Counted from the first letter of the stretch, positions 6,001 through 21,000 are shown. The stretch is DNA of 64,000 nucleotides from Saccostrea cucullata (GCF_032062105.1 NW_026939106.1:434001-498000); one strand, 5' to 3'. Notes: a model not told the origin generated them from the sequence alone. Numbers and translations: made by a program.

Positions 6001-9000
6001 CTTCAGAGGCAAATTCAGCAGCGGGACCCTGCCCCATGCAACACCAATGAACTTGAAGCTGCTCTGTTAGAGGAATGGGATCGGATACCTCAAAGGACCA
6101 CTCATTCGAAGTTTCCCCAGGCGTCGCAGGGCTGTTATTCAGGCAAGGGGAGGCCACACCAAGTATTGAGAGTTGTCAGGATAATTGTCAGTCTTTAATT
6201 AAACAAATTATGCAATTACTGTATATGAAAATTCACATTAAAACCCAGAAGTCTCTGTCGAGATTGAAGCTCTACTGGTACTTATAGTCAAGGAAGAGAA
6301 AAGTACTTAAGCAGTTGGGAATTAGAGCTTTACAACAGCAATAAACAGAATAATTATCCTTGATTAAGTCTCTTTATGATCTTAGTGTAGTCTATTTGTA
6401 TGCCACATTATAATATAATCAGACAAAAACTGTATTTGGAGTAGCATGTTGAGCGAATTTCACAGAAATTTCTATTTTTAGTAACCAAGGCAATAATGTT
6501 CTTCGAAGTCGAAAAACGATATATATATAGAATTATGTATCTTAGTGTTGTCTACTTGTGTGCCTAGTTATATTGAAATCAGACCAAAACTGTAGGAGGC
6601 GTAGCAGTTTGAAAGAATTTCAAAAAAAAAATCTATTTTGAGTAACCACGGCAACAACGTTCATCGAAATCATAAACCGATACACAGAATTATGTATCTT
6701 AGTGTAGTCTACTTGTGTGCCAAGTTATACTGAAATCAGACTAAAACTGTAGGAAGAGTAGCATTTTTAAAAGAATTTCACAGAAATTTCTATTTTTAGT
6801 AACCACGGCAACACCGTTCATTGAAATCAAAAACCGATATATAGAATTATGTATCTTAGTGTAGTCTACTTGTGTGCCAAGTTATATTGAAATCAGACGA
6901 AAACTGTAGGAGGAGTAGCATTTTGAAAAATTGTTTACTGACAGACAGACGGACGGACGCCGGGCGCATTACTATCGCATAAGCTCTTCTGGTCTCTGAC
7001 CAGTAGAGCTAATAAGGGTATCCATAATTGTTAATCTTGTTCTTCTGTCCAAGTGAACATTTACCATTACTTTTTTGTCAAATGTGTTATAACTTTACAG
7101 AGGAAATTATGTAATTTATTTTGATTAATTATACTTTTTCGACCTAGAAATTATAACCCTTTCATAACCCTTAACTTTTTTTGTTGAGTATATTATATAA
7201 ACTTCTTCCATGTGTGCAAAATAGATATTTTCTGATCAACTTTGCGTATCATCAGTTTGCACGGAGTTGGGGGGAATAAAGTATTTTTTTTTAGATTGTG
7301 TACGTGTCAATCGCATCATCTCGGGTCTTTCCGTCAGTGGTCGGAAAAACAACCTCGAATGTATTAACATCGCCGGATGTTAAAAATTTATACATTTCCT
7401 GTTTAGTCAAATGTAGGACAGACGGAGTTAGAAGTCTCTTCTATAGTATATTTTAGGTAATATCAAATGAATAAAGTTAAACTCCATATTCCACAGATAA
7501 AAGGTCTCCATGCATTTATTTCAAAGATCGTGAAAAAGGAGGGTTGTAATGGCGTCTACCACATACATTCGAGGTCGTTTTTCCGCTAGTCGGAAAGGCC
7601 CGAGAAGTTGCGATTGTGTACGTGTTTGTCCTTGAGCGGAAGTGACGTAACGACATGAAGCGACATTAATGTCTCGTTTTCACCCATAAAAATATATAAT
7701 TACATGTACTAGGAATCGATATTCAAAGAAAGTATATTACTAAGAATCGATATACAGCAAAAGTCGAGTATATATTCAACCATACGCTAAAGACTGATGT
7801 AATTGCAGTGATAACATTGATCTGCTTTACCTATTCATTTGTTTTAAAAGATTTTCATCTATAGTGTAGTATATTAACCGATATGAACTTAAATGATGTA
7901 CATCTTTAACTACACATTAAAATTCTTACAAAATAGTTTCCCAGTTACCAGGTAAATACTTTGATGCCCCCGTAATCGAAGAACTTGGGGGTATGTAGTT
8001 GTTGCCCTGTCCGTCTGCCTGTTTTTGTCCGAAAAAAGATTTAACCTTGCGCATAACTTTTGAGTGGATGGAGCTATGGTTTTCAAATTTTAGGTGTATT
8101 ACTTAATTTAGACTTGACCTTTCTTTGGGTACCACCAAGTTCGACCTCTCCACCTTGGAGCATAACACACTTCTACAAGAAATTAGCAATCTTTAACCTT
8201 GGCCATTGCTTTTGAATAGTTAGGCCCAAAATAAAATATTGTTTGTTTGCAGTTGCTTACCGACCCACTGAAAATGTTCCTGTCCCAAACTTTTTTCCAG
8301 CCACTTTGTAATATTAAATTTTTTCCCAATTTTTCAGGATATTGAAACTGTTTCATTTTCAATTTTTGTCTTTATCAATCCAGTATTTTATACCAAGAGT
8401 GGAGCATATTCGTGTATGGAAAAACTCTCTTTTATGTTATCTACCAAAAATCTGAAAACAATTTTTTTTTTCACCAAAAAAAAAAAAAAATTTTATTGCG
8501 TTTAATCGCAATAATTATTGCGTTTAAACGCAAAACATTGCGTTTAATCGCAATAATTATTGCGATTAAACAATGGCAACAAATTGCAATATTTTGCGTT
8601 TAAACGCAATAATTATTGCGATTAAACGCAATAATATTTTTGCGTTTAATCGCAATAATTATTCGTTTAATCGCAATATTTTTGTGCATTTAAACGCCAT
8701 AATCTTTGGTTTTAAAAGCAATCATTTCTATTGATCTTTGAAGAGTGTAATGGATCCTGGCTGATATGTAGTAACCTATGAGGAGAATGGTGTATTGTTA
8801 AGCTTTATAGATTCAGATTCTTCTGAACAAGCATTTTCTGAATGGTTAAATCAGTGGTATAGATTTAAGGAGAAAGAAGTGTCGGTCTGTAGAAACAAAG
8901 ACAACCTAAGTAAGATTGATTGATTGTATATTGTTTAACGTCCGTCTCGAGAATTTTTCACTCATATGGACATGTGGAGACGTCACCGTTTGCCGGTGAA

Positions 9001-12000
9001 GGGCTTCAAATTTAGACCTATACTCGGCACTCAGGGCCATTAAGCAGTAAGGGTTCTTTATCGTGCCAGTGCCTACCGTGACACGGGACCTTGCTCAATT
9101 GCTTACAAACACAAATGACATTTCTTATATTATTTTCTCTACGTTTAGTTTTTAAAACTATATAAACAATTTTTAAGGATTTTCGAAATAAAAGACCGGA
9201 AAATTAATAATGATTGAAAACTATCACTCCACGTTGCGGCCACAAAGTTTAAACCCTATACCTGTATAAAGGGCTTAAGGAAACAATTGATAAAATATTT
9301 AGACTTATGATGTATATGTACATGTACATGTTATGTATATGTATATTCACATCCTTTCCTTTGATCACATACAGTAAACACGAGAACACGAGAATTAATT
9401 AGCTGTGGTACCTAAGGAATTGATTAATGGCTGCGTTAAAAGCGCTGGGCTCTAATAGCTTTATGAAACTTGGTTGTTAGGATGCCATTGTTAAACTTAA
9501 AATCTCACAAACTGCAACATTTTCAAAAAGACACAAAACCAAACGGCTCTTCTTTAAAGAATCGGGCCATAGTATTTATCTTAATCTTGCATTTAAATAT
9601 AAACTAGATGCTGTCATGAGACTGTAATACCCGCAATAAGGCGTTTGCCTCTAAATACACACTCCTATATATTGGGCTTTCCAAGGAAAAAGTCAAAATA
9701 ATTCTATAATTTACACAGAACATGTATTCTTCAAATTGAGTATGAAAATCCCAGACCCTGTGACCCATGTGACCTATGACTCAGAACCTCTTATATGTAT
9801 TTTATATGCTTAATTCATTACCAGTCTGAAAAAACAGAATTTAGTTAATGATGTAAATTAGATTTTGATAAATGTTTTGCTCATAATAGGAGTCCCCCCG
9901 ACACCACAAACACACGACTCGTACGTTTTTTTTTTTTTTGAAATAGGCTAGATGGAAAAGTATATAGTTTTACCGTTCAGGGGCGTAGCCAGGGTACATT
10001 TGATGTGGACTCCTGGATAGGCTGGGGGTTTGGGGGTCGCCTTAAGGCCCCCAATGGGGGTGGTGAATTTTCGACGATTTCGATGTTCATGTTTGACCCT
10101 TCTGAAAATATTTTCTTACCCTTTTTCTGTTTGTTATGCAGCCACATTTAAGGTCTGTTCTTTCCTTGTATAAAAAGCGGATAGTCACTTAAAAATGAGA
10201 AAAGATCTGTCCAAAAGCGAACCCACTAAAATACGTATGGTAACATACGGTAGTTGGTTAAAGTGGTTGATTGGTTTAGACAGACCACGTAATTGACTGA
10301 TAGTCAGGCTTACATTAATATTAAAAATACATCTCTAAAGATTGAAAATAACAAAGACAGAAGAATTCTTTTCAACACATTTTCTTGCACATTACCTATG
10401 TATACATTGTATACATTTTAAGATGAATGTTCATAAATATTTAAAAATCTGGTATCTTAAACTTTTTGCAACAATTATAAAAACATGTAAAATATACTAC
10501 TGGTTTTAAGAAAGTGTTACGGATGCCTTATCAGGGGTGGATCCAGGAATTGAAGTTAGGGGGGTGCAAGATTTAGGCAGGGGGACTGGGGGCCGCCTTG
10601 AGGCCTGGTGGGGCCCAGGGGGCGAAGCCCCGGAAGCTCATGGATTCTAGAGGTTTTGTAGGGTAAAAATGAGGTCTACCAAGTACTGCGAGTAGACGTT
10701 TTAAACATTAATTTTCTCGACAAAACTATGTTTATGCTAACTTTGACAATTTTAGGGGTGCGCCCCCCTTAAATCCGCCACTGCTTATTATTATTTTTTT
10801 AAAGGTTAAACTGAATTTTACCAATTTTTCGATTTTTGATGTTCATATATAAAGATGAATAATGATTTTTGAAGTCTCCCATGAATCCGATATTACTGAG
10901 GTTAAAATTGGGAGGGGGGGGGGGTTATCGTTACAGAAGTTAAGCATTGCGGTTGGAAGGTAATTTCCATGAAGAGAAATTGAAATTATTGGCATTAAAT
11001 AAAATTATCGTTTCTTTTAAGGGAACCGACTGGGGTTTTATTGTGTGACATCTACAATAGAGAAACTCTTTAAGAATGTAATAATTTATTACACTTGAAA
11101 AAAAAATCAGCAATATTCGATAGTTAATCAAAATCTGGGAAAATCTTTTGATTTCAGGTAGGTGTATAATATCGTATTTTCCACCAAAACTGATTCTGTT
11201 GATTTTGATTTTCATTTATTTTTTTTTTATCGTTAATTCTAAATTGTCTCTAAGTTTTTTTTTTATTTTTAAAATTATTTACTAATATTTTGAAAAAAAA
11301 TGTGAGTACGCTTTCCAATATGTCGCCTGTCTCGTTCTCTTCTCCTTTCTTTTTTTTCTTTCTTTCCTGGTTCATACTTCATGTAAGAAGTCACGAAATG
11401 AGATGAAATGGGTTGGTGGGTGGGGCAATTGTCCAAGACAGTGCTTCTGGTAGAGTCAGCGGCATTTAGCGGCATTTCTCCAAGACAGACCTTCTGGTAG
11501 AGTCAGCGGCATTTGTCCAATACAGACCTTCTGTTAGAGTCAGCGGCATTTAGCGGCATTTGTCCAAGACAGACCTTCTGGTAGATCAGCGGCATTTAGC
11601 GGCATTTGTCCAAGACAGACCTTCTGGTAGAGTCAGCGGCATTTAGCGGCATTTGTCCAATACAGACCTTCTGGTAGAGTCAGCGGCATTTAGCGGCATT
11701 TGTCCAAGACAGTGCTTCTGGTAGAGTCAGCGGCATTTGTCCAAGACAGACCCTCTGGTAGAGTCAGCGGCATTTAGCGGCATTTGTCCAAGACAGACCC
11801 TCTGGTAGAGTCAGCGGCATTTAGCGGCATTTGTCCAACACAGACCCTCTGGTAGAGTCAGCGGCATTTAGCGGAATTTGTCCAAGACAGACCCTCTGGT
11901 AGAGTCAGCGGCATTTAGCGGCATTTGTCCAAGACAGACCCTCTGGTAGAGTCAGCGGCATTTAGCGGCATTTGTCCAAGACACACCCTCTGGTAGATTC

Positions 12001-15000
12001 AGCGGCATTTAGCGGCATTTGTCCAAGACACACCCTCTGGTAGATTCAGCGGCATTTAGCGGCATTTGTCCAACACAGACCCTCTGGTAGAGTCAGCGGC
12101 ATTTGTCCAACACAGACCCTCTGGTAGAGTCAGCGGCATTTAGCGGCATTTGTCCAATACAGACCCTCTGGTAGAGTCAGCGGCATTTAGCGGCATTTGT
12201 CCAAGACAGACCCTCTGGTAGAGTCAGCGGTATTTGTCCAAGACAGACCCTCTGGTAGAGTCAGCTGCATTTAGCGGCATTTGTCCAAGACAGACCCTCT
12301 GGTAGAGTCAGCGGCATTTAGCGGCATTTGTCCAAGACAGACCTTCTGTTCTTTTTCCATGGATTTACTGATATACAGTAATTAATGGAGAGATGGTTTA
12401 CAATTTTATGTATGAAAGATACTTAAATAGTATAATAATATTTGCTTTTCCTTAATGACAGGGACTTTCTCAATTAGTAATATGTATATATATATTTTTT
12501 CATTTGATTTGGTGGTATTTCCAGTATTATTAAAGAAATATTACCCCAGTAATTAAATATCAGTTTAAATTGTACAAAGAGCTCTTTGTACTTTGGTAGT
12601 ATATTTGAAATAATTCAATTAACAGCTTTATCTTGGTCAACACTAGCCATAAGTATCATGCTAATTATCAATTTGCAGTTAATGATATCTTGCAGTCAGA
12701 TACAGACAAAATTACCACCATTATAACAAAACAGAAGATGATTAGGGAAAAGGTGTCAAACATCTGGCTTCATGCATTTGATATTGCTCGATTATCTGAT
12801 TATTACTTATAAATTAAAAGTACAACATGTATAACATATTAATTATTAAGTTATATTTATGAAAATATGTCAAATAAAATACAAATGTACTAAATAAAGA
12901 AAATAGTGTAATTACTCCATAAATTACAGTAACAGAAGAAGCTTTACTTTGAGAATGCTTCAATATTATCTCATTATAAGTAGGTGTGTCTTAATTTATT
13001 CAACAAATAAACTCTCTGAACAATAAATAAAATCTACAAAACTATTGGTCAATCAGTGTAATTTTATCTACAACAATACCCAAATAAAAGTCGTGATAAA
13101 GGTTCAATTATCTCTTACTTCACATCATCGCCAATCTTCTTCAACCAATGACCCTTGTTTAAAATTTCTACGTATTACAGCAATTACTGTCTTTTCAGTC
13201 AACACTATCATGTACAACTGTCAACTTTGCAGGATTTAAAACGAAAGTAGAATGGTAGATGAATACCGATCTCGATGAGAATTAAGACAAAGAAAAAAAT
13301 CGAGGCAGGGTATAAATTCTAGGTGGGCAGGGATGAGAATCTAGAAATATATTTATTATGGCCAATATTCAGTAAAAGATATAAAATTCAGATAGGTTAA
13401 AATTCTGTAATCATGCAGTTTATTCCGTAAAAGATATAAAATGCAGCTTATTCCGTAAAAAAAGATAAGTATGCAGCTAATAGTCCGTTTTCCAATACCC
13501 AACTCCGGCGTTGGTTTCCTCTTTTACATTACCCGCGATCACGTGACACCAGACATTCCTTCGTTGTTTACAAATGGCGAGTAGTTGCTTCGCTTTGTTG
13601 AAGGTAACTGATTTGCAGAAATATTTATCAGATCGTGGCATTACTGCTACAAATTTACGGAGGAATAATCTTATTGAACTTTGTGAAGCTGTTAAGTCAC
13701 TCGATTTATCAATTGATCCTGATTTTACATGCAATACTACACTTGATCTAAAGAAAAAGTTGGTACAACTACCCATTTCAGATCCATTCCTTGACAACGA
13801 CTTCACGCCCGATTTCTCAGAGATTCCATCCAATTTCACTTTATATGACATATTTAATTATCTTTTACACAAAACATCAGACTATGATAAAAAGAAGTTA
13901 AGAGCCTACAAATCGTGTGAGGATTATAGATTATTTATAGACGGCCACGTAGAGAGTCTGACATTCAACAAGTGTGGAGATGCTGAGGTCTGTTTGTTTC
14001 GAGCGAAAGTTAAACCTACTCAAAAAGAGACTACATATATGAGTACAAAGTTTTACCAACTATGGTTCTCTATCAAGAAAGCAACTGGAGAAGTCGCTTC
14101 AGCCTACTGTACATGTATTGGGGGGTTAGTATGTTTTAAAGAATGTGTATTTAAGCTTGTTAAGTAAGTCAGCTGATTGCATATTGTTACATTTGAAATA
14201 AGTAATTTCAGTTCAAAAAGGAATATGTGATGAATGTTCTTTTTATGATTTTAGAATGGATGGTGCTTGCAGACATGTTTCTGCTGCTCTGTATGAGCTT
14301 GAAGACTTTGAAATGAAGTCGGTGACAGATGGGGAAAACAAATGGATGAAAAGACCCAGAAGCCACGACTGTCCAGTGCCTGTTAAAAGGCTAAGGATTG
14401 TAAAAGCAAAGTAAATATTAATACAAGTTGTTTTTGTTTTAAAAAATTCATTACATGTTCTTGTTTTTATTTTTCATTTCTATTTTACTTTTTTGTTTAT
14501 ATTTTCTCTTTGTAGTTGAGGTTTAATTTTGAATAATTCAAGAGTGTTGACTGTTACCTGTGTTGTTGAAACTGAGAAGTCAGTGAGCCGTTGCTCACTA
14601 GTAAGTAAATCTAAATTAAACATGCATTTCTTATGTTTTTCTATGTATTTATTATAATATTTATAGAACACAAGGGTAGTTTGAAATCTGACTCAAGTAA
14701 TATTTTGCTTTGTGAAAAATCTTTCATGATTTTCTTTCATTTAACAGATTTTCCGTTTTGAACGAAGAGAAAGAAAATTTGCTGGATCTGTATGATCCTA
14801 GATCAACTGAAGATCGCAACAAGGAGATCAACATAGCTAATTTTGCCAAGAATTTAACACAGGTATTATTACATCAATTATGAATGAGTTGTTAAAACAT
14901 TTTTATGTATGATATTGTACATTTTATCATTCACTAAGGAATCTGTTGTATTTAGTTGCAAGCAGATACACAGGCACTAGACATTTTAGAGGATGGCAGT

Positions 15001-18000
15001 ATTAATCCAACAGCTGAATCAAAAGATACGGATATGTCATGCCTTGCCAATTCAGTGAAAGAACAGTTAAAGAATATTTCTAGTAAGAAATTAATATATT
15101 GTAAGAAATTAATATACGTATAACATGAATTTGCATTTTCATCCCAGCATGATTAATATTTCTTATTCATAAAATTGGTTATACCAGCTGTAATTTAAAA
15201 GTCTGTTTATAGTTGTTAGGATGTAATATAAGAAATTCAAAGTGAGATATTTTTGTTTTGATGTGTAAATTTTAAAAGGAAGTAATGTATTACTCAAAGC
15301 TTTTTTTCACATATCACCTATTTTATAATATCAACAAAATACATTTCATGTTTTTGTGCATTTCTATTATGATCTTTGAATTGTTACAAAATTTCAAAAA
15401 GTTTCTACATCCAATTTGATTTTTTGCATCAACTTTTGTATCATACATGCATGTATTTTTACTGGATTTTAGTGTCTGACCACGGAACTCCAACTGTATC
15501 CCAGTTTCGAGAAAGTTTTGGACAGTTGCACCAGAAATTATCATGGATATTGAGCAGAGCACTAGAGGTCAAACTGAAAATCCAGCATGGACGGCTATGA
15601 GATATGGAATGCTTACAGCTTCTAATTTTCGTAAAATTTGCCAAGCAGTAGACAAGGGTCACTGCCCACCGTCACTTCTAAAATCAATCATGTTGAAATA
15701 CAACACAAGCATTTCTGTGCCTTCTATAAATTGGGGGTTAAAAAAAGAGAAAGTGGCTCGTGAGCTTTACACAAGGGCAAGTAGGTGTTTTCACAAGAGA
15801 GTGTGCGTCGAGGAAAAGGGTCTGTATGTCATGAGTGATTACCCTTTTATTGGTTGTAGTGTAGATGGAATTCTTTCTTGCCAGTGTCATGGAAAAAGAA
15901 TTTTTGAGATAAAATGCCCATTTTCATTAAAACATATGCATCCTAAAGAGGTTGCTGTTCAGAAAGGCTGTTCAGTTGTTGATAACATGTCTTTTGTCAC
16001 CGAGAAATCTGAATATTATCATCAGATGCAAGGTCAGATGGGTATTTATGGTATTCCACACTGTGATCTTGTCATTTATACAGAAAAAGGTATCCATGTT
16101 TCACAACTTCCATTTCATGAAGCATTTTTCAGAGATATGATAATGAAAATGAATGTTTTTTTTGATCGTTATTTATTTCAACAGTTGTTGACTGATGTAT
16201 CAAATATGGAATGAAAATTAAAATGAACATGATGAACTGTACTTTTTTTCACAGTTCCAGTAAAAAACACATGAGTATTAGTATATAGTTCTATACATTG
16301 TCTTGACCATAATTAGAAAACAACTGCCACAGCATATGATATCATTGATATGCCCTTCAAATACAATATATAAAGTTAACATTGCAAAAGAAAAAAAAAC
16401 AACTTTAACACAAATTTCTTATTTTTTCCATTCCTTATACTCAATGTGTATATCATGTGTTATTAGTAAGAACAAATAATTCATTACATCTTGATCGCTT
16501 GTGATAGTACAGTTTTAAAAAAATCCATGTGCATCTTTGTTCATTGTACATTTCATGAATCAATTGATAACAATGCTGAAGCTTAATAAAATGTCAGATA
16601 ACTAGTTATTATGTTTATTCTTTAGACTATTGAATTATTATTTTAGTGAGACACAGCACTATGCAATTTGTTAAAGAAATATAAAAAATAAAAAATACAT
16701 TATGCAACATCACATAAGTTATAATTACTTTACACCAAATTTATTTGAAATCTGTGGTAAGCCAGCAATAACTATTTAATAATCTGAAACAAACGATCAA
16801 CTGTAATAAAAGAGGCTAGATTTTCTCTGCTAAATATTCCCAGCACTTATCTGGCATACATTTCATATATGCTACATTATTTCACTAGCTGGTGGTCTAA
16901 ATTGCATAAAGCTGCACACAAGCATACTATCTGATCAATGATGGGCTTTAATTTAAGGGGTATAACACCCTGCAAAATGTTGAAACATTTAAGTCGACCA
17001 ATTGCCCTCTCTACATGTATTCTTGCCCTAGCTATGCGTCTTGTTTTTGTTACAGCTAAACCCGATAGTTGTCTGTTAAAAGCAAAGGGGGGAATGTTTA
17101 GCGTAGCTCCTTTTAGAGCCAGGTTTCCTCTTATCAAAAAGCCTTGATCTGCCATTATGTCATCCCCTCTTTCTATACATTCTAAAAATCCAGATTCTTC
17201 AACTATCCGTTTATCAGAGATGCTGCCAGTGAATAAACTAGACAAAAAGCAGATTGATCCTGTTGGGGTAATTGCAATTAATGACTTTAGAGTATTGTGG
17301 TGCTTATAAGATGACCAAGTAATTCTCTGTGAGGAAGGTAGACTGGGTTTTTGAATAAAAAACTCTGTGCAATCAATAATACACCTTGTGCTGGGGAAAT
17401 ATTTAAAACAACTTGGTAATTTTTGTGCAATTTGATTTCTAGTTGGCCATGAAATTAGAAATTTAAGTTCCAATGCAAGAAAAGTTGTCCATGTGAAAAA
17501 AATTTTACTGACAGTTCCAGCCTGTACACCAAAGATAGCACCCAACGTTTTTGTATCTATCCCTCTTCTGAGGCGCATCAGGGTCATCACCATTTCTTCT
17601 CGAATAGATAATAGTCTCTTTGACCCTCTCCTTTTCATCTAAAAATGTAGTATAGTTCTTGAAGAGTTCTATAAATGTCACTAACAATAAATACTAAATT
17701 TTAATTTAAGTTTAAAACTTAAACCTATTTTTCTATACACAATTTGAAAATTTTGAATATTATAAATTTATGTAAATACTTGAAAATCCTATGAAATGTG
17801 GATGATCAAATAAGGCAAGAATGTACAATTATATAATCCCTAGGAGTTAATATATTATCTTAATAAGAAGCAATAATACCTCATTATTTTCCAAGTTAGT
17901 TTCCTTTCCCCTCCAGTATGAAAGTCTGGCAGCTTTGTCTTTGAGCAAATTGAGCAACAGAAAGAAAATTCCAAGAGAAAGCCCTGTTATAATATTCATG

Positions 18001-21000
18001 GACATAAATTATTGTGAAAATTATATATCAAGAAAATACCGTACTAATTTATGCAAGCATCATAACAGTGTAGACAGCTTGATGCTAAATGAATAGTCTA
18101 AGATTTATTGAATTAAAATTAATTAAAAATAGATTTTGACATACCAGTGTAGAATTTACAGGATGCATCATTCTTCAGGACATCATTCATGACATGGCTT
18201 CTTCTCATACTGCCTTTGTCCTTCAGATGAATATCATCATATGCTGATAAATCTTCTAATGTAACATCAGTCTGACACTGTATACTGGTAGTGGAAACAG
18301 CTGTGGTGTTGGCTTTTGAGCAATATGAATGGTCAACTTAAAAAAAGAAAAATAAATTGGCCATTTTGAAGCAAGTAAATTTTGCCACCAGATTAAAACC
18401 AACCCTCAATCCCCCCCCCCCCCAAAAAAAAAAATATAGATCATTAATGTGATACCTTTGGGGATGTCATCCTTTCCTTCTATTACAGGCAACACTTCCA
18501 CATCTTCATTATGTATTTGTAGTACATCACAGTCATCACCACTTTGAATTCCTTCAACTTCTGAAGACATTTCTTCATGGGCACCCACATCCCAGCAAAA
18601 TACCTCTGATTAAAAAATGTTATTTTCTAGATGAATTATTAATTAAACCAAAATACATAACAGAAAAATTATTACTCAACAATACAACAGATCAATTTTA
18701 ATACTAGTATATAATGAGTGATATTCATTTGAACTTGCCACAAAGGTGATTTATAGATCATGTACCATTTTTTATTTTATTTTCCTGTGGTCCATTTCCG
18801 TTGTCAGTGTCAACTCTGGACAACACTCGTCTCTTTTTCCTGTATGCTCTCTCTATATCAAACGAAGTGCCTGATGCTGGCAACGGGTCTGGGTGCTCTT
18901 CAGTAGGCCTTCCAGATACAAAATGCTTGGAGCATATATAAGTGGACTTGTTTACATTAGCTACGGAGAAGTTTTTTCCTACCACACAGTTTCACCCACC
19001 TCTGGCATTTATCTGCCTGGGAAAACGGTTTTGGAAAAGGAATCCACGTTACTCCACTCATGTGCTGTCTTTCTGAATACCGTGAATCACTCTTACAGGT
19101 TCCCCAACAACAATGTTTAACCATACTGGCACTTTACGCAAACTATAGCTGTATCAGGTCAAATAAGCCGCGCGTCGTAATGTCTGGTATCGCTTAAAGC
19201 ATTGATAATTATGACGTCAGGGCTCCTTATATCATGTATAATTGGAAAATCGACTATTCCATAAAAGATATAAAACTGGGATAGGTTAACATTTTGTACT
19301 CATGCAGCTTATTCCGTAAAAGATGTAAAATACAGCTCATTCCGTAAAAAAAGATAAAAAATGCAGCTTATTCCATAAAAGATATAAAACTGGGATAGGT
19401 TAGCAATTTGTAATTATGCAGCTTATTCCGTAAAAGATTTTTAAAAATGCAGCTTATTCCGTAAAAGATATTAAAATGGGATACATTTTATTATCATGCA
19501 GCTTATTCCGTAAAAGATTTAAAATGCAGCTTATTCCGTGAAAGATATAAAACTGGATTAAGTGAACATTTTAAAATCTAACAGCTTATTCCATAAAAGA
19601 TATAAAATGCAGCTTATTCCGTGAAAGATATAAAACTGGGATAGGTTAATGTTTTTTAAATCATGCAGTTTATTTCGTAAAAGATATAAAACTGGGATAG
19701 GTTAGCAATTTGTAATCATGCAGCTTATTCCGTAAAAGATTTTTTAAAAAATGCAGCTTATTCCGTAAAAGATATAAAACTGGGATAGGTTAACATTTTG
19801 TACTAATTGTAGGCCTACAAATAATGTTTTGTACTTTGGTAGTATCTTTAAAAATAATAAAATTAACAGCTTTATCTTGGTCAGCACTAGCCATAAGCAT
19901 CATGCTGATTAGCAATTTACAGTTATTGATATCTTGCAGTAAGATACAGACAAAATTACCACTTATAACAAAACAGAAGATGATTAGGGAAAAGGTGTCA
20001 AACATCTGGCTTCATGCATTTAATATTGCTCGATTATCTAATTATTATTAATAAATTAGAAGTACCCCATGTATAACATATTAATTATTAAGTTATACTT
20101 ATAAAAAGTTGCAAAATAAAATACCAATTAAAGAAAATAATGTGTTTACTCCATCAATTACAGCAACATGCAGAAGAAGCTTTACTTTAGAATTATAAGT
20201 AGCCTTGTTTAATTTTTTCAACAAATATGAAGATCTGTCTTGGAAAAATGCTGCTGACTTTATCAGAACGTCTGTGTTGAACAAATGCCGCTGACTCTAC
20301 CAGAGGGGTCTGTCTTGGACAAATGCCGCTAAATGCCGCTGACTCTACCAGAGGGTCTCTCTTGGACAAATGCCGCAGACTCTACCAGAAGGTCTGTCTT
20401 GGACAAATGCTGCTAAATGCCGCTGACTCTACCAGAAGGTCTGTCTTGGACAAATGCCGCTAAATGCCGCTGACTCTGCCAGAAGGTCTCTCTTGGACAA
20501 ATGCCGCTAAATGCCGCTGACTCTGCCAGAGGGTGTGTCTTGGACAAATGCCGCTAAATGCCGCTGACTCTACCAGAGAGTCTGTCTTGGACAAATGCCG
20601 CTAAATGCCGCCGACTCTACCAGAGGGTCTGTCTTGGTAAAAATGCCGCTAAATGCCGCTGACTCTACCAGAGGGTCTCTCTTGGACAAATGCCGCTAAA
20701 TGCCGCTGACTCTATCAGAGGGTCTGTCTTGGACAAATGCCGCTAAATGCCGCTGACTCTACCAGAGGGTGTGTGTTTGACAAATGCCGCTAAATGCCGC
20801 TGACTCTACCAGAGGGTGTGTGTTTGACAAATGCCGCTAAATGCCGCTGACTCTACCAGAGGGTCTGTCTTGGACAAATGCCGCTAAATGCCGCTGACTC
20901 TACCAGAGGGTCTGTCTTGGACAAATGCCGCTAAATGCCGCTGACTCTACCAGAGGGTCTGTCTTGGACAAATGCCGCTAAATGCCGCTGACTCTACCAG

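What the first reader, a model, noticed from the sequence alone, without database searches (positions are those of the whole stretch)
13482..19255. Near-intact two-gene ISL2EU transposon pairing a THAP-DDE transposase with a SAP-SWIM-YqaJ nuclease
Seen: TIRs, an AT TSD and two convergent 5-exon genes. Both catalytic sets are retained (transposase D/D/E; nuclease D..ExK plus QxQxQ). Known: ISL2EU elements carry a YqaJ/lambda-exonuclease-like gene where Harbinger carries a Myb/SANT gene. To my knowledge the function of that nuclease is not established. Inference: the SAP (DNA binding) + SWIM + exonuclease protein may process donor or target ends, or promote recombinational repair, acting as a two-component transposition system. 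This copy looks young enough to reconstruct. The family is described; the mechanism is the open question.
Basis: partly seen in the sequence, partly recalled or inferred. Interest (0 to 1): 0.78.

Follow-up and report, generated by a model that had tools for sequence, protein, structure and literature searches.

The report
Decayed two-gene ISL2EU transposon copy
This is one slightly broken copy of an already described kind of jumping gene (ISL2EU) that carries a transposase plus a phage-type DNA exonuclease. The exonuclease is clearly kept by selection, but its job in jumping is still untested.

Summary
Window 13482-19255 is a 5,774-bp ISL2EU DNA transposon with 15-nt inverted ends (13/15 match) and an AT duplication. 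It carries two convergent five-exon genes, and spliced RNA contigs confirm their introns.

- **Genes.** One gene encodes a THAP + HTH_Tnp_4 + DDE_Tnp_4 transposase (521 aa in a sibling copy). The other encodes a SAP / SWIM-type zinc finger / YqaJ nuclease (563 aa).
- **Damage.** This copy is not intact. A missing C after 15525 shifts the nuclease frame before its YqaJ domain. An extra base in the A-run 18967-18972 shifts the transposase frame at codon about 51. None of the three young copies (97-99% alike) has both genes open.
- **Nuclease.** It has a lambda-exonuclease fold and keeps the catalytic D/E/K and the 5'-phosphate-binding Arg.
- **Selection.** It evolves under purifying selection as strong as the transposase (dN/dS 0.2-0.36). 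It has co-diverged with the transposase across nine lineages in this genome.
- **Deletion subfamily.** An older subfamily lacking 1.7 kb of the nuclease gene still spread to at least five sites.
- **Sister family.** A sister family has at least 18 near-identical copies; 14 loci show both frames open.

The family and its two-gene layout are published, and the scan has already flagged other ISL2EU elements in this genome. The mechanism remains an inference.

The parts
13480..13481 (.). left copy of the 2-bp target-site duplication (AT)
   Evidence: the joined empty form 13479->19256 skips 5,776 bases
13482..13496 (+). left terminal inverted repeat, AGTCCGTTTTCCAAT
   Evidence: identical in L002, L003 and the older copies L033-L035
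13574..14124 (+). nuclease exon 1: start codon, SAP-like helix pair (aa about 6-40), beta-rich region, and the first half of the SWIM-type finger (C179, C181)
   Evidence: 49% identical to full-length homolog P0132 aa 4-182. Pfam SAP scores only 12 bits here but 25-41 bits in relatives. RNA joint 14123/4->14254/5.
14255..14410 (+). nuclease exon 2: second half of the SWIM-type finger (C189, H191) and the conserved W motif
   Evidence: RNA joint
14503..14600 (+). 98-nt segment included in one RNA contig between exons 2 and 3; it has stop codons in all frames, so it is probably an unproductive or alternative isoform
14748..14862 (+). nuclease exon 3 (poorly conserved linker)
   Evidence: RNA joints 14600->14748 and 14860/2->14954/6; phases fit
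14956..15082 (+). nuclease exon 4 (linker)
   Evidence: RNA joints
15473..16214 (+). nuclease exon 5: YqaJ / lambda-exonuclease domain (R20, D108, E122, K124, Q161, Q163 of ORF 15543-16211) and the stop codon
   Evidence: Pfam YqaJ 7e-24. Joint 15082->15473 in the RNA contig and in one raw read. AF2 pLDDT 97; Foldseek top hits are LHK-Exo and lambda exonuclease. Residue alignment.
15525..15526 (+). site of a 1-nt deletion specific to this copy; it shifts the nuclease frame and gives a stop at codon 359 of 563, before the YqaJ domain
   Evidence: A C is present here in L002, L003 and in the contigs of runs X1 and X6
16877..17638 (-). transposase exon 5: HTH_Tnp_4 + DDE_Tnp_4 catalytic core (D89, D164, E210) and the stop codon
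   Evidence: Pfam 2.6e-45 and 2.8e-12; invariant residues; RNA joint 17638->17880
17880..17983 (-). transposase exon 4
   Evidence: RNA joints; model open in L002
18145..18336 (-). transposase exon 3 (192 nt), missed by ORF inspection and found from RNA
   Evidence: joints 17982/3->18144/5 and 18336->18456; in frame and open in L002
18456..18605 (-). transposase exon 2 (acidic linker)
   Evidence: RNA joints
18766..19124 (-). transposase exon 1: THAP zinc finger, split into two frames in this copy
   Evidence: Pfam THAP 38.4 bits on the unbroken exon of L002; 19 and 14 bits on the two window pieces
18967..18972 (-). run of six A (minus strand) that has five A in every other copy and contig; the +1 frameshift gives a stop at codon 56 of 521
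19241..19255 (-). right terminal inverted repeat, AGTCGATTTTCCAAT on the minus strand
19256..19257 (.). right copy of the AT target-site duplication

Best explanation
**What it is (confidence above 0.95).** This is a member of the ISL2EU group (PHIS superfamily) of cut-and-paste DNA transposons. It inserted at an AT inside a 28-nt satellite. This copy is dead as assembled: one 1-nt indel in each gene stops the nuclease at codon 359 and the transposase at codon 56.

**How the family works.** The first step follows from known DDE chemistry. The rest is inferred, at about 0.4 probability.
- The THAP-HTH-DDE transposase binds the ends, cuts the element out and pastes it at AT sites.
- The second protein is a lambda-exonuclease-type 5'->3' exonuclease tethered to DNA or chromatin by its SAP and SWIM-type (in some families also PHD) modules.
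- It loads on the 5'-phosphorylated double-strand ends that DDE cleavage creates and resects them.
- Resection steers the broken donor site, and perhaps the gapped insertion site, into homology-directed repair. The element is then copied back from the sister chromatid, so copy number rises.
- The protein acts in trans, so nuclease-deleted copies can still move.
For: **Identity**
- TIRs, AT duplication and a restored empty site.
- Pfam DDE_Tnp_4 2.6e-45, HTH_Tnp_4 2.8e-12 and YqaJ 7e-24; THAP 38 bits in the sibling copy.
- Published definition of ISL2EU.

**Frameshifts**
-.

**Exonuclease reading**
- AF2 model with pLDDT 97. Its best structural matches are LHK-Exo and lambda exonuclease, TM 0.65-0.75.
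- A profile of 121 relatives hits LHK-Exo at 3.7e-26 and lambda exonuclease at 3e-18. Lambda D119/E129/K131 and R28 align to invariant or near-invariant D108/E122/K124 and R20.

**The gene matters to the element**
- dN/dS is 0.36 against the 89% copy and 0.23-0.29 against the 80% copies, equal to the transposase at 0.20-0.35.
- Exons are better conserved than introns.
- By my hand pairing of the two capped hit lists, roughly 38 of the top 50 YqaJ loci in this genome lie within about 1.5 kb of an ISL2EU DDE gene, mostly tail to tail.
- Nuclease and transposase distances correlate over nine lineages (Mantel r 0.62, p 0.001).
- 14 loci of a 97-100% identical sister family keep both frames open.
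- The genes are transcribed and spliced.

**Acts in trans**
- At least five independent insertions share one 1.7-kb deletion in the nuclease gene.
Against: - There is no biochemical or genetic test of any ISL2EU nuclease in the literature I could search.
- The element encodes no annealing partner such as Red-beta or RecT.
- The homotrimer prediction gave no answer, so a toroidal processive form is unshown.
- Spread of the nuclease-deleted subfamily is equally compatible with the nuclease being dispensable.
- Related Spy elements transpose with a single protein (abstract of PMC11304231), so the DDE enzyme probably needs no nuclease for cleavage.
- dN/dS was estimated with a simple counting method on repeat copies that may carry CpG decay.
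- The two window-specific indels could be assembly errors. The read contigs come from other or collapsed copies and cannot settle this.
Confidence: 0.5

Rival explanations
1. **Heteromeric transposase, Tn7-like.** The DDE protein cuts only the 3' ends. The PD-(D/E)XK nuclease cuts the 5' strands at the element ends, as TnsA does for TnsB, so both proteins are obligatory subunits of one transpososome.
For: YqaJ belongs to the same PD-(D/E)XK superfamily as TnsA (established knowledge). Linkage and co-divergence of the two genes are strict. The nuclease is under selection as strong as the transposase.
Against: The nearest sequence and structure relatives are end-dependent exonucleases, and the residue aligned to lambda R28 is retained. 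Related PHIS transposases work without any nuclease: Spy with one protein (abstract), and Harbinger with a DNA-binding partner. No interaction between the two proteins was tested here.
Confidence: 0.15
2. **Accessory protein not involved in DNA breakage and joining.** For example, it might counteract host silencing or competing DNA, or target the element to particular chromatin through SAP, SWIM or PHD. The nuclease would act on something other than transposition intermediates.
For: N- and C-terminal modules vary between families: SAP, SWIM, and PHD in about 10% of relatives. PHD fingers of the ING type match at 1e-13, hinting at histone-tail reading. Nuclease-deleted copies spread.
Against: Catalytic and end-binding residues are invariant across 121 relatives, so nuclease chemistry is what selection keeps. 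No data point to any other substrate.
Confidence: 0.2
3. **The copy is really intact.** The two frameshifts are assembly errors, or the nuclease one is bypassed by a cryptic acceptor, so this copy is a functional autonomous element.
For: The transposase indel lies in a homopolymer (A6 against A5). An AG at 15524-15525 used as acceptor would give an open 545-aa nuclease frame in the window copy.
Against: The nuclease indel is not in a homopolymer. RNA supports the acceptor at 15473, not 15526. The three young copies differ by 1.4-3% and each carries its own indels, as expected for decaying copies.
Confidence: 0.1

Closest known systems
ISL2EU group of the PHIS (PIF/Harbinger-ISL2EU-Spy) superfamily, as described in PMC4482050, PMC4122938 and PMC9179366
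   Same: It shares the 2-bp AT duplication, short TIRs, a THAP + HTH + DDE transposase, a second gene with a YqaJ exonuclease domain, and an animal host.
   Different: Its TIR starts AG rather than the 'usual' GG. Both genes carry four introns, whereas sister families in this genome are intronless. The three papers never use the term SWIM, and SAP (searched in only one of them) did not occur; here SAP and a SWIM-type finger precede YqaJ in this and many sister families.
PIF/Harbinger transposons
   Same: They have a related DDE_Tnp_4 transposase and a two-gene organisation in which both products are thought to be needed.
   Different: Harbinger makes a 3-bp duplication, and its second protein is a Myb/SANT or MADF DNA binder without enzymatic activity. 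Here the transposase carries its own THAP finger and the partner is a nuclease.
Lambda exonuclease and LHK-Exo (PDB 1avq, 3sm4, 3syy)
   Same: They share the fold (TM 0.65-0.75), the catalytic Asp/Glu/Lys, the Arg aligned to lambda R28 and the QxQ helix.
   Different: Sequence identity is only about 20%. The transposon protein has about 340 extra N-terminal residues (SAP, SWIM-type finger, linker). No Red-beta-like partner is encoded. Trimer formation is unshown.
Tn7 TnsA/TnsB
   Same: It is also a transposon that pairs a DDE enzyme with a PD-(D/E)XK nuclease.
   Different: TnsA is a restriction-endonuclease-like 5'-end cutter. The ISL2EU protein resembles end-dependent exonucleases instead. 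The resemblance is by analogy only and was not tested.
Herpesvirus alkaline nucleases (KSHV SOX, EBV BGLF5) and mimivirus R354
   Same: They share the YqaJ / Viral_alk_exo core (Pfam 1e-11; Foldseek 1e-6 to 1e-5).
   Different: They are much larger viral proteins with extra domains and roles in genome processing or host shut-off.

Membership tests
ISL2EU (PHIS superfamily) | DDE transposase of the IS5 / PIF type (DDE_Tnp_4) with HTH_Tnp_4 | tested here: met
   154 bits and 46.5 bits, both above the Pfam cut-offs. D89/D164/E210 are conserved among 10 paralogs.
ISL2EU (PHIS superfamily) | THAP zinc finger at the transposase N-terminus | tested here: met
   38.4 bits (cut-off 23.9) on the unbroken exon of sibling L002. 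In the window the domain is split by the +1 frameshift into pieces scoring 19 and 14 bits.
ISL2EU (PHIS superfamily) | second gene encoding a YqaJ exonuclease-domain protein | tested here: met
   85 bits (cut-off 22).
ISL2EU (PHIS superfamily) | 2-bp target-site duplication, typically AT | tested here: met
   AT on both sides in three full-length copies with unrelated flanks, and AT at the left end (the only end checked) of three older copies. The restored repeat unit and the joined form skipping 5,776 bases agree.
ISL2EU (PHIS superfamily) | transposase falls in the ISL2EU clade, not the PIF/Harbinger or Spy clades, in a tree with reference sequences | not tested
YqaJ / lambda-exonuclease family | PD-(D/E)XK catalytic Asp...Glu-x-Lys | tested here: met
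   D108 is near-invariant and E122 and K124 are invariant in 121 sequences. They align to lambda D119/E129/K131.
YqaJ / lambda-exonuclease family | Arg that binds the terminal 5'-phosphate (lambda R28, from memory) | tested here: met
   R20 is near-invariant and aligns to R28 in the profile alignment to 6m9k/1avq.
YqaJ / lambda-exonuclease family | lambda-exonuclease fold | tested here: met
   AF2 pLDDT 97; Foldseek hits 3syy, 3sm4 and 1avq at E 4e-10 to 5e-8, TM 0.65-0.75.
YqaJ / lambda-exonuclease family | toroidal homotrimer | tested here: inconclusive
   The three-copy complex prediction returned 'no answer'.
YqaJ / lambda-exonuclease family | 5'->3' exonuclease activity on duplex ends | not testable with these tools
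   Needs purified protein.
SWIM zinc finger (PF04434) | CxCxnCxH signature in a beta-beta-alpha unit, with a profile score above the gathering cut-off | tested here: inconclusive
   CxCx7CxH with a conserved Gly is invariant in 16 relatives. It is present in the window across the exon 1/2 junction, and the paralog model shows a beta-hairpin followed by a helix. Pfam SWIM reaches only 15-19 bits against a cut-off of 19.6 in four relatives. ZSWIM8 matches at E 0.04 by profile and 0.055 by Foldseek. The window's own finger could not be profile-tested because it is split by an intron.
SAP domain (PF02037) | profile score above the gathering cut-off (23.9 bits) | tested here: inconclusive
   The window exon 1 scores 12.2 bits and its 49%-identical homolog P0132 scores 20.7. 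Aligned relatives pass the cut-off: P0109 41.3, P0060 28.6, L041 29.4, L042 25.0 and L044 32.2 bits.

The most novel reading that the evidence does not exclude
The SAP / SWIM / lambda-exonuclease protein may be a transposon-encoded end-resection factor. It would turn an ordinary cut-and-paste reaction into a net-replicative one by forcing homology-directed refilling of the donor gap. Alternatively, it may be an obligatory second catalytic subunit. Either would be the first eukaryotic DNA transposon shown to bring its own recombination or repair nuclease. This genome offers natural open copies of both genes to test it.
Probability: 0.3. Interest if true: 0.7.

Novelty: new member of a known kind. 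Interest (0 to 1): 0.3.

Why it matters
The element itself is ordinary: a decaying copy of a published transposon group in a genome that holds dozens of such families. Three things are useful.

- **Firmer ground for the open question.** What the ISL2EU exonuclease does (stated as unknown in PMC4482050) now has more to build on. The protein has a lambda-exonuclease fold with the Arg aligned to the 5'-phosphate-binding residue intact. It is under selection as strong as the transposase and has co-diverged with it.
- **Consistent architecture.** The protein carries SAP plus a SWIM-type finger, a combination the open-access descriptions do not mention.
- **Test material.** The same genome holds a near-identical multi-copy sister family with both genes open, and a subfamily that spread without the nuclease. 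Together these are natural material for a direct test with and without the nuclease.

Tried and rejected
1. **First nuclease model.** It used an acceptor at 15526 and gave an open 545-aa frame in the window. I rejected it because the RNA contig and a raw read place the acceptor at 15473. With that acceptor the window copy is frameshifted.
2. **First transposase model.** It had four exons. I rejected it because RNA shows a fifth exon, 18145-18336.
3. **Homotrimer prediction** of the YqaJ domain: 'no answer'. It counts neither for nor against.
4. **Foldseek of a full-length paralog model** to confirm SWIM. Only a weak ZSWIM8 match appeared (rank 41, E 0.055).
5. **Are the window-specific indels real?** Read laying could not decide. 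The contigs carry variants of other or collapsed copies, and contigs drop rare variants.
6. **Is the nuclease-deleted subfamily a functional mini-gene?** No. All copies are riddled with stops and frameshifts.
All searches were exon by exon by reference, so SWIM (which spans the exon 1/2 junction) could not be profile-tested on the window's own protein. Joined reading frames were only counted for length and stops inside scripts.
8. **The large word-index protein search** was not used, because Pfam and the representative search already settled the families.
9. **Organism.** I did not verify it. Another agent's note calls it an oyster.


Full report
**1. What is at 13482-19255**

The two ends are 15-nt inverted repeats, AGTCCGTTTTCCAAT and AGTCGATTTTCCAAT, matching at 13 of 15 positions. 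Each is abutted by AT.

The whole 5,774-bp stretch recurs twice more in the same 1.17-Gb assembly. L002 on contig C15098 is 98.6% identical and L003 on C13272 is 96.9% identical. A 5'-truncated copy, L038/L004, is 89% identical. The three full-length copies have unrelated flanks and the same ends, and each has AT on both sides.

The window copy landed in a 28-nt tandem array. Joining the left flank (ending ...gcagcta), one AT and the right flank (starting tccataaaagat...) rebuilds one repeat unit at exactly the right length. A DNA run holds that joined form as a high-depth contig, 13479->19256, skipping 5,776 = 5,774 + 2 bases. Ends, duplication size and mobility are therefore shown, not just plausible.

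**2. Genes**

Pfam, exon by exon, gives these scores:

| ORF | Family | E-value |
|---|---|---|
| 15543-16211(+) | YqaJ | 7e-24 |
| 15543-16211(+) | Viral_alk_exo | 1e-11 |
| 16880-17638(-) | DDE_Tnp_4 | 2.6e-45 |
| 16880-17638(-) | HTH_Tnp_4 | 2.8e-12 |

THAP appears as two weak pieces in different frames.

My first splice models, built from GT/AG logic, were partly wrong. Laying public reads corrected them. Contigs of run X6 carry the intron-less joints, and the DNA run X1 carries none of them. X6's record only guesses RNA; I treat it as RNA on that evidence.
- Nuclease joints: 14123/4->14254/5, 14860/2->14954/6 and 15082->15473. The last is also seen in one raw oligo-dT read.
- Nuclease intron 2 (14411-14747) has no direct joint. 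X6 skips 14410->14503 and 14600->14748, so its contig keeps the segment 14503-14600.
- Transposase joints: 17638->17880, 17982/3->18144/5, 18336->18456 and 18605->18766.

The resulting models are:
- **Nuclease (+):** 13574-14124, 14255-14410, 14748-14862, 14956-15082, 15473-16214. This is 563 aa in sibling copies.
- **Transposase (-):** 19124-18766, 18605-18456, 18336-18145, 17983-17880, 17638-16877. This is 521 aa.

The RNA contig also includes a 98-nt piece, 14503-14600, with stops in all frames. It is probably an unproductive isoform.

Expression is low: 20 reads in about 12.8 million. The expressed copy matches none of the three assembled copies exactly.

**3. State of this copy**

Relative to L002, L003 and all read contigs, the window copy has two private 1-nt indels.
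- It lacks a C after 15525. This is not in a homopolymer. It stops the nuclease at codon 359 of 563, upstream of the YqaJ domain.
- It has six instead of five A in the run 18967-18972. This stops the transposase at codon 56 of 521, inside THAP.

The siblings are damaged too. L002 has an open transposase but a +1 near the nuclease C-terminus, giving a stop at codon 548. L003 is broken in both genes. No assembled copy of this family is fully open.

The catalytic residues themselves are all still encoded in the window.
- Transposase: D89/D164/E210.
- Nuclease: D108/E122/K124, with Q161 and Q163.

On the unbroken L002 exon, THAP scores 38.4 bits.

**4. The nuclease protein**

*Relatives.* A search of 1.84 billion representatives with the YqaJ exon found 6,657 relatives. 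Among the best 150 are full-length proteins of 535-725 aa that also align to exons 1 and 2. P0132 is 49% identical over exon 1, and the exon 1/2 junction falls exactly where predicted.

*N-terminal modules.* Intronless nuclease genes of sister families in this genome, together with these proteins, share one layout.
- An N-terminal SAP domain, scoring 25-41 bits and above the cut-off in five of them. The window's own exon scores only 12 bits.
- A beta-rich region ending in an invariant C-x-C-x2-G-x4-C-x-H.
- A conserved CTS..C.W motif.
- A variable linker, then YqaJ, and sometimes a C-terminal PHD finger.

*SWIM.* The finger has the SWIM signature, and a paralog model shows a hairpin-plus-helix shape. 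The profile evidence stays below threshold. Pfam scores 15-19 bits against a cut-off of 19.6, and ZSWIM8 matches at E about 0.04-0.055. I call it 'SWIM-type, probable'.

*YqaJ domain.* It folds with pLDDT 97. Its best structural matches are LHK-Exo and lambda exonuclease, TM 0.65-0.75. In the profile alignment, lambda D119, E129, K131 and R28 match conserved D108, E122, K124 and R20. That R28 binds the 5'-phosphate is my recollection. These are the marks of an end-dependent 5'->3' exonuclease, not of a site-specific endonuclease.

*Oligomer.* A trimer prediction gave no answer.

**5. Is the nuclease kept by selection, and is it needed?**

Exons of both genes are better conserved than introns and the intergenic spacer. 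Against the 89% copy, exons are 93-97% identical and the rest 85-93%.

Nei-Gojobori dN/dS values are below.

| Comparison | Nuclease dN/dS | Transposase dN/dS |
|---|---|---|
| Window vs the 89% copy | 0.36 (P = 0.001 against neutrality) | 0.20 |
| Window vs three ~80% copies | 0.23-0.29 (P 1e-8 to 1e-10) | 0.30-0.35 |

The nuclease is therefore as constrained as the transposase.

Across the genome, each gene has at least 150 scored loci (650 and 1,198 candidates). By my hand pairing of the two capped lists, roughly 38 of the top 50 YqaJ loci lie within about 1.5 kb of an ISL2EU DDE gene, mostly tail to tail. A few families are in tandem. Over nine lineages, nuclease and transposase distances correlate (Mantel r 0.62, p 0.001), so the pair has been inherited together for a long time.

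Two observations pull in different directions.
- Older copies of this very family (L031/L032, L033, L034, L035, L037) are 82-93% alike. They share one junction that removes about 1.7 kb, window ~13971-15671: the SWIM finger, exons 2-4 and the start of the YqaJ domain. Their flanks are independent, and all are now decayed. So a derivative with a transposase gene but no nuclease gene spread to at least five sites. The nuclease is either supplied in trans or dispensable.
- A sister family (L041 type) has at least 18 full-length copies at 97-100% identity. Fourteen loci have both frames open (about 604-aa and, in most, about 513-aa open frames). The youngest burst seen here keeps the nuclease.

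**6. Mechanism**

*Shown:* a cut-and-paste element with an AT duplication; a DDE_Tnp_4 transposase with its own THAP and HTH modules; and a conserved, transcribed, spliced second gene with an exonuclease fold.

*Inferred, at about 0.4:* DDE cleavage leaves 5'-phosphorylated duplex ends. A lambda-exonuclease-like enzyme, held on DNA or chromatin by SAP, SWIM or PHD modules, would resect them. Resection would favour homology-directed repair of the donor gap from the sister chromatid, which restores the element and yields net copy gain. It might also tidy the gapped insertion site.

*Rivals:*
- A Tn7 TnsA-like second-strand cutter (0.15). The exonuclease-type features disfavour it. So does the fact that related Spy and Harbinger transposases need no nuclease.
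- An accessory role outside breakage and joining (0.2).
- This copy is really intact and the indels are errors (0.1).

**7. Comparison and novelty**

Every published defining feature of ISL2EU that I could test is met. Only clade placement with Repbase references was not possible.

[quoted passage not shown] They state that its function is unknown, and they do not mention SAP or SWIM. I found no later functional work.

The scan has already flagged other ISL2EU elements in this same genome (s1-729481, s1-701035, s1-732177, s1-716844). One follow-up calls the host an oyster, which I did not verify. PMC4122938 mentions oyster ISL2EU entries in Repbase.

**Verdict:** this is a new, decayed member of a known kind. 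Interest is modest. The value lies in the supporting evidence on the nuclease and in the natural test material the genome offers.

Noticed in passing
window 13413-13478 and 19255-19793: A 28-nt tandem array (unit ATGCAGCTTATTCCGTAAAAGATATAAA, with 55-140-nt higher-order periods) surrounds the element. Word depth in DNA run X1 is about 9,000-11,000 at its flanks against about 150 inside the element, so it is a high-copy satellite.
   Followed up: partly
window 12000-12348 and 20283-21000+: 47-nt tandem arrays in opposite orientation flank the satellite and the transposon, giving a foldback-like outer structure. This has already been reported separately in the scan (s1-701149, s1-701096).
   Followed up: no
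L041 (G000:C6734:230-5201) and at least 17 other loci listed: A sister ISL2EU family has at least 18 full-length copies at 97-100% identity. It has an intronless nuclease frame (580 aa from the first Met; about 604 aa as the open frame reported) with SAP-SWIM-YqaJ, and a 513-aa THAP-HTH-DDE gene. The TIR starts GG and is preceded by AT. It looks recently active.
   Followed up: partly
L041 695-800: A 106-nt palindromic unit (51-nt arms, 92% complementary) sits in the 5' part of every copy of that sister family. It also occurs alone at many other loci at about 90% identity, so it looks like a nested MITE.
   Followed up: no
L044 (G000:C6883) and G000:C14853:488749-491296: Some ISL2EU families have the nuclease and transposase genes on the same strand (tandem) instead of tail to tail. 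Their nuclease ends in a PHD finger; ING-type PHD matches reach 1e-13 with the family profile.
   Followed up: partly
window 14503-14600: A 98-nt segment is retained between nuclease exons 2 and 3 in an RNA contig. The reported upstream joint is GT..AT, and the segment has stops in all frames. If translated, it would give a SAP+SWIM-only protein.
   Followed up: partly
run X11: A seawater metagenome run holds about a third of the element's sampled words. This presumably reflects environmental DNA of the host animal.
   Followed up: no
L036 (G000:C3965:88751-96637): Another old copy has a different internal deletion (element 410->2321) and several kilobases of inserted foreign sequence between the nuclease remnant and the transposase gene.
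   Followed up: no
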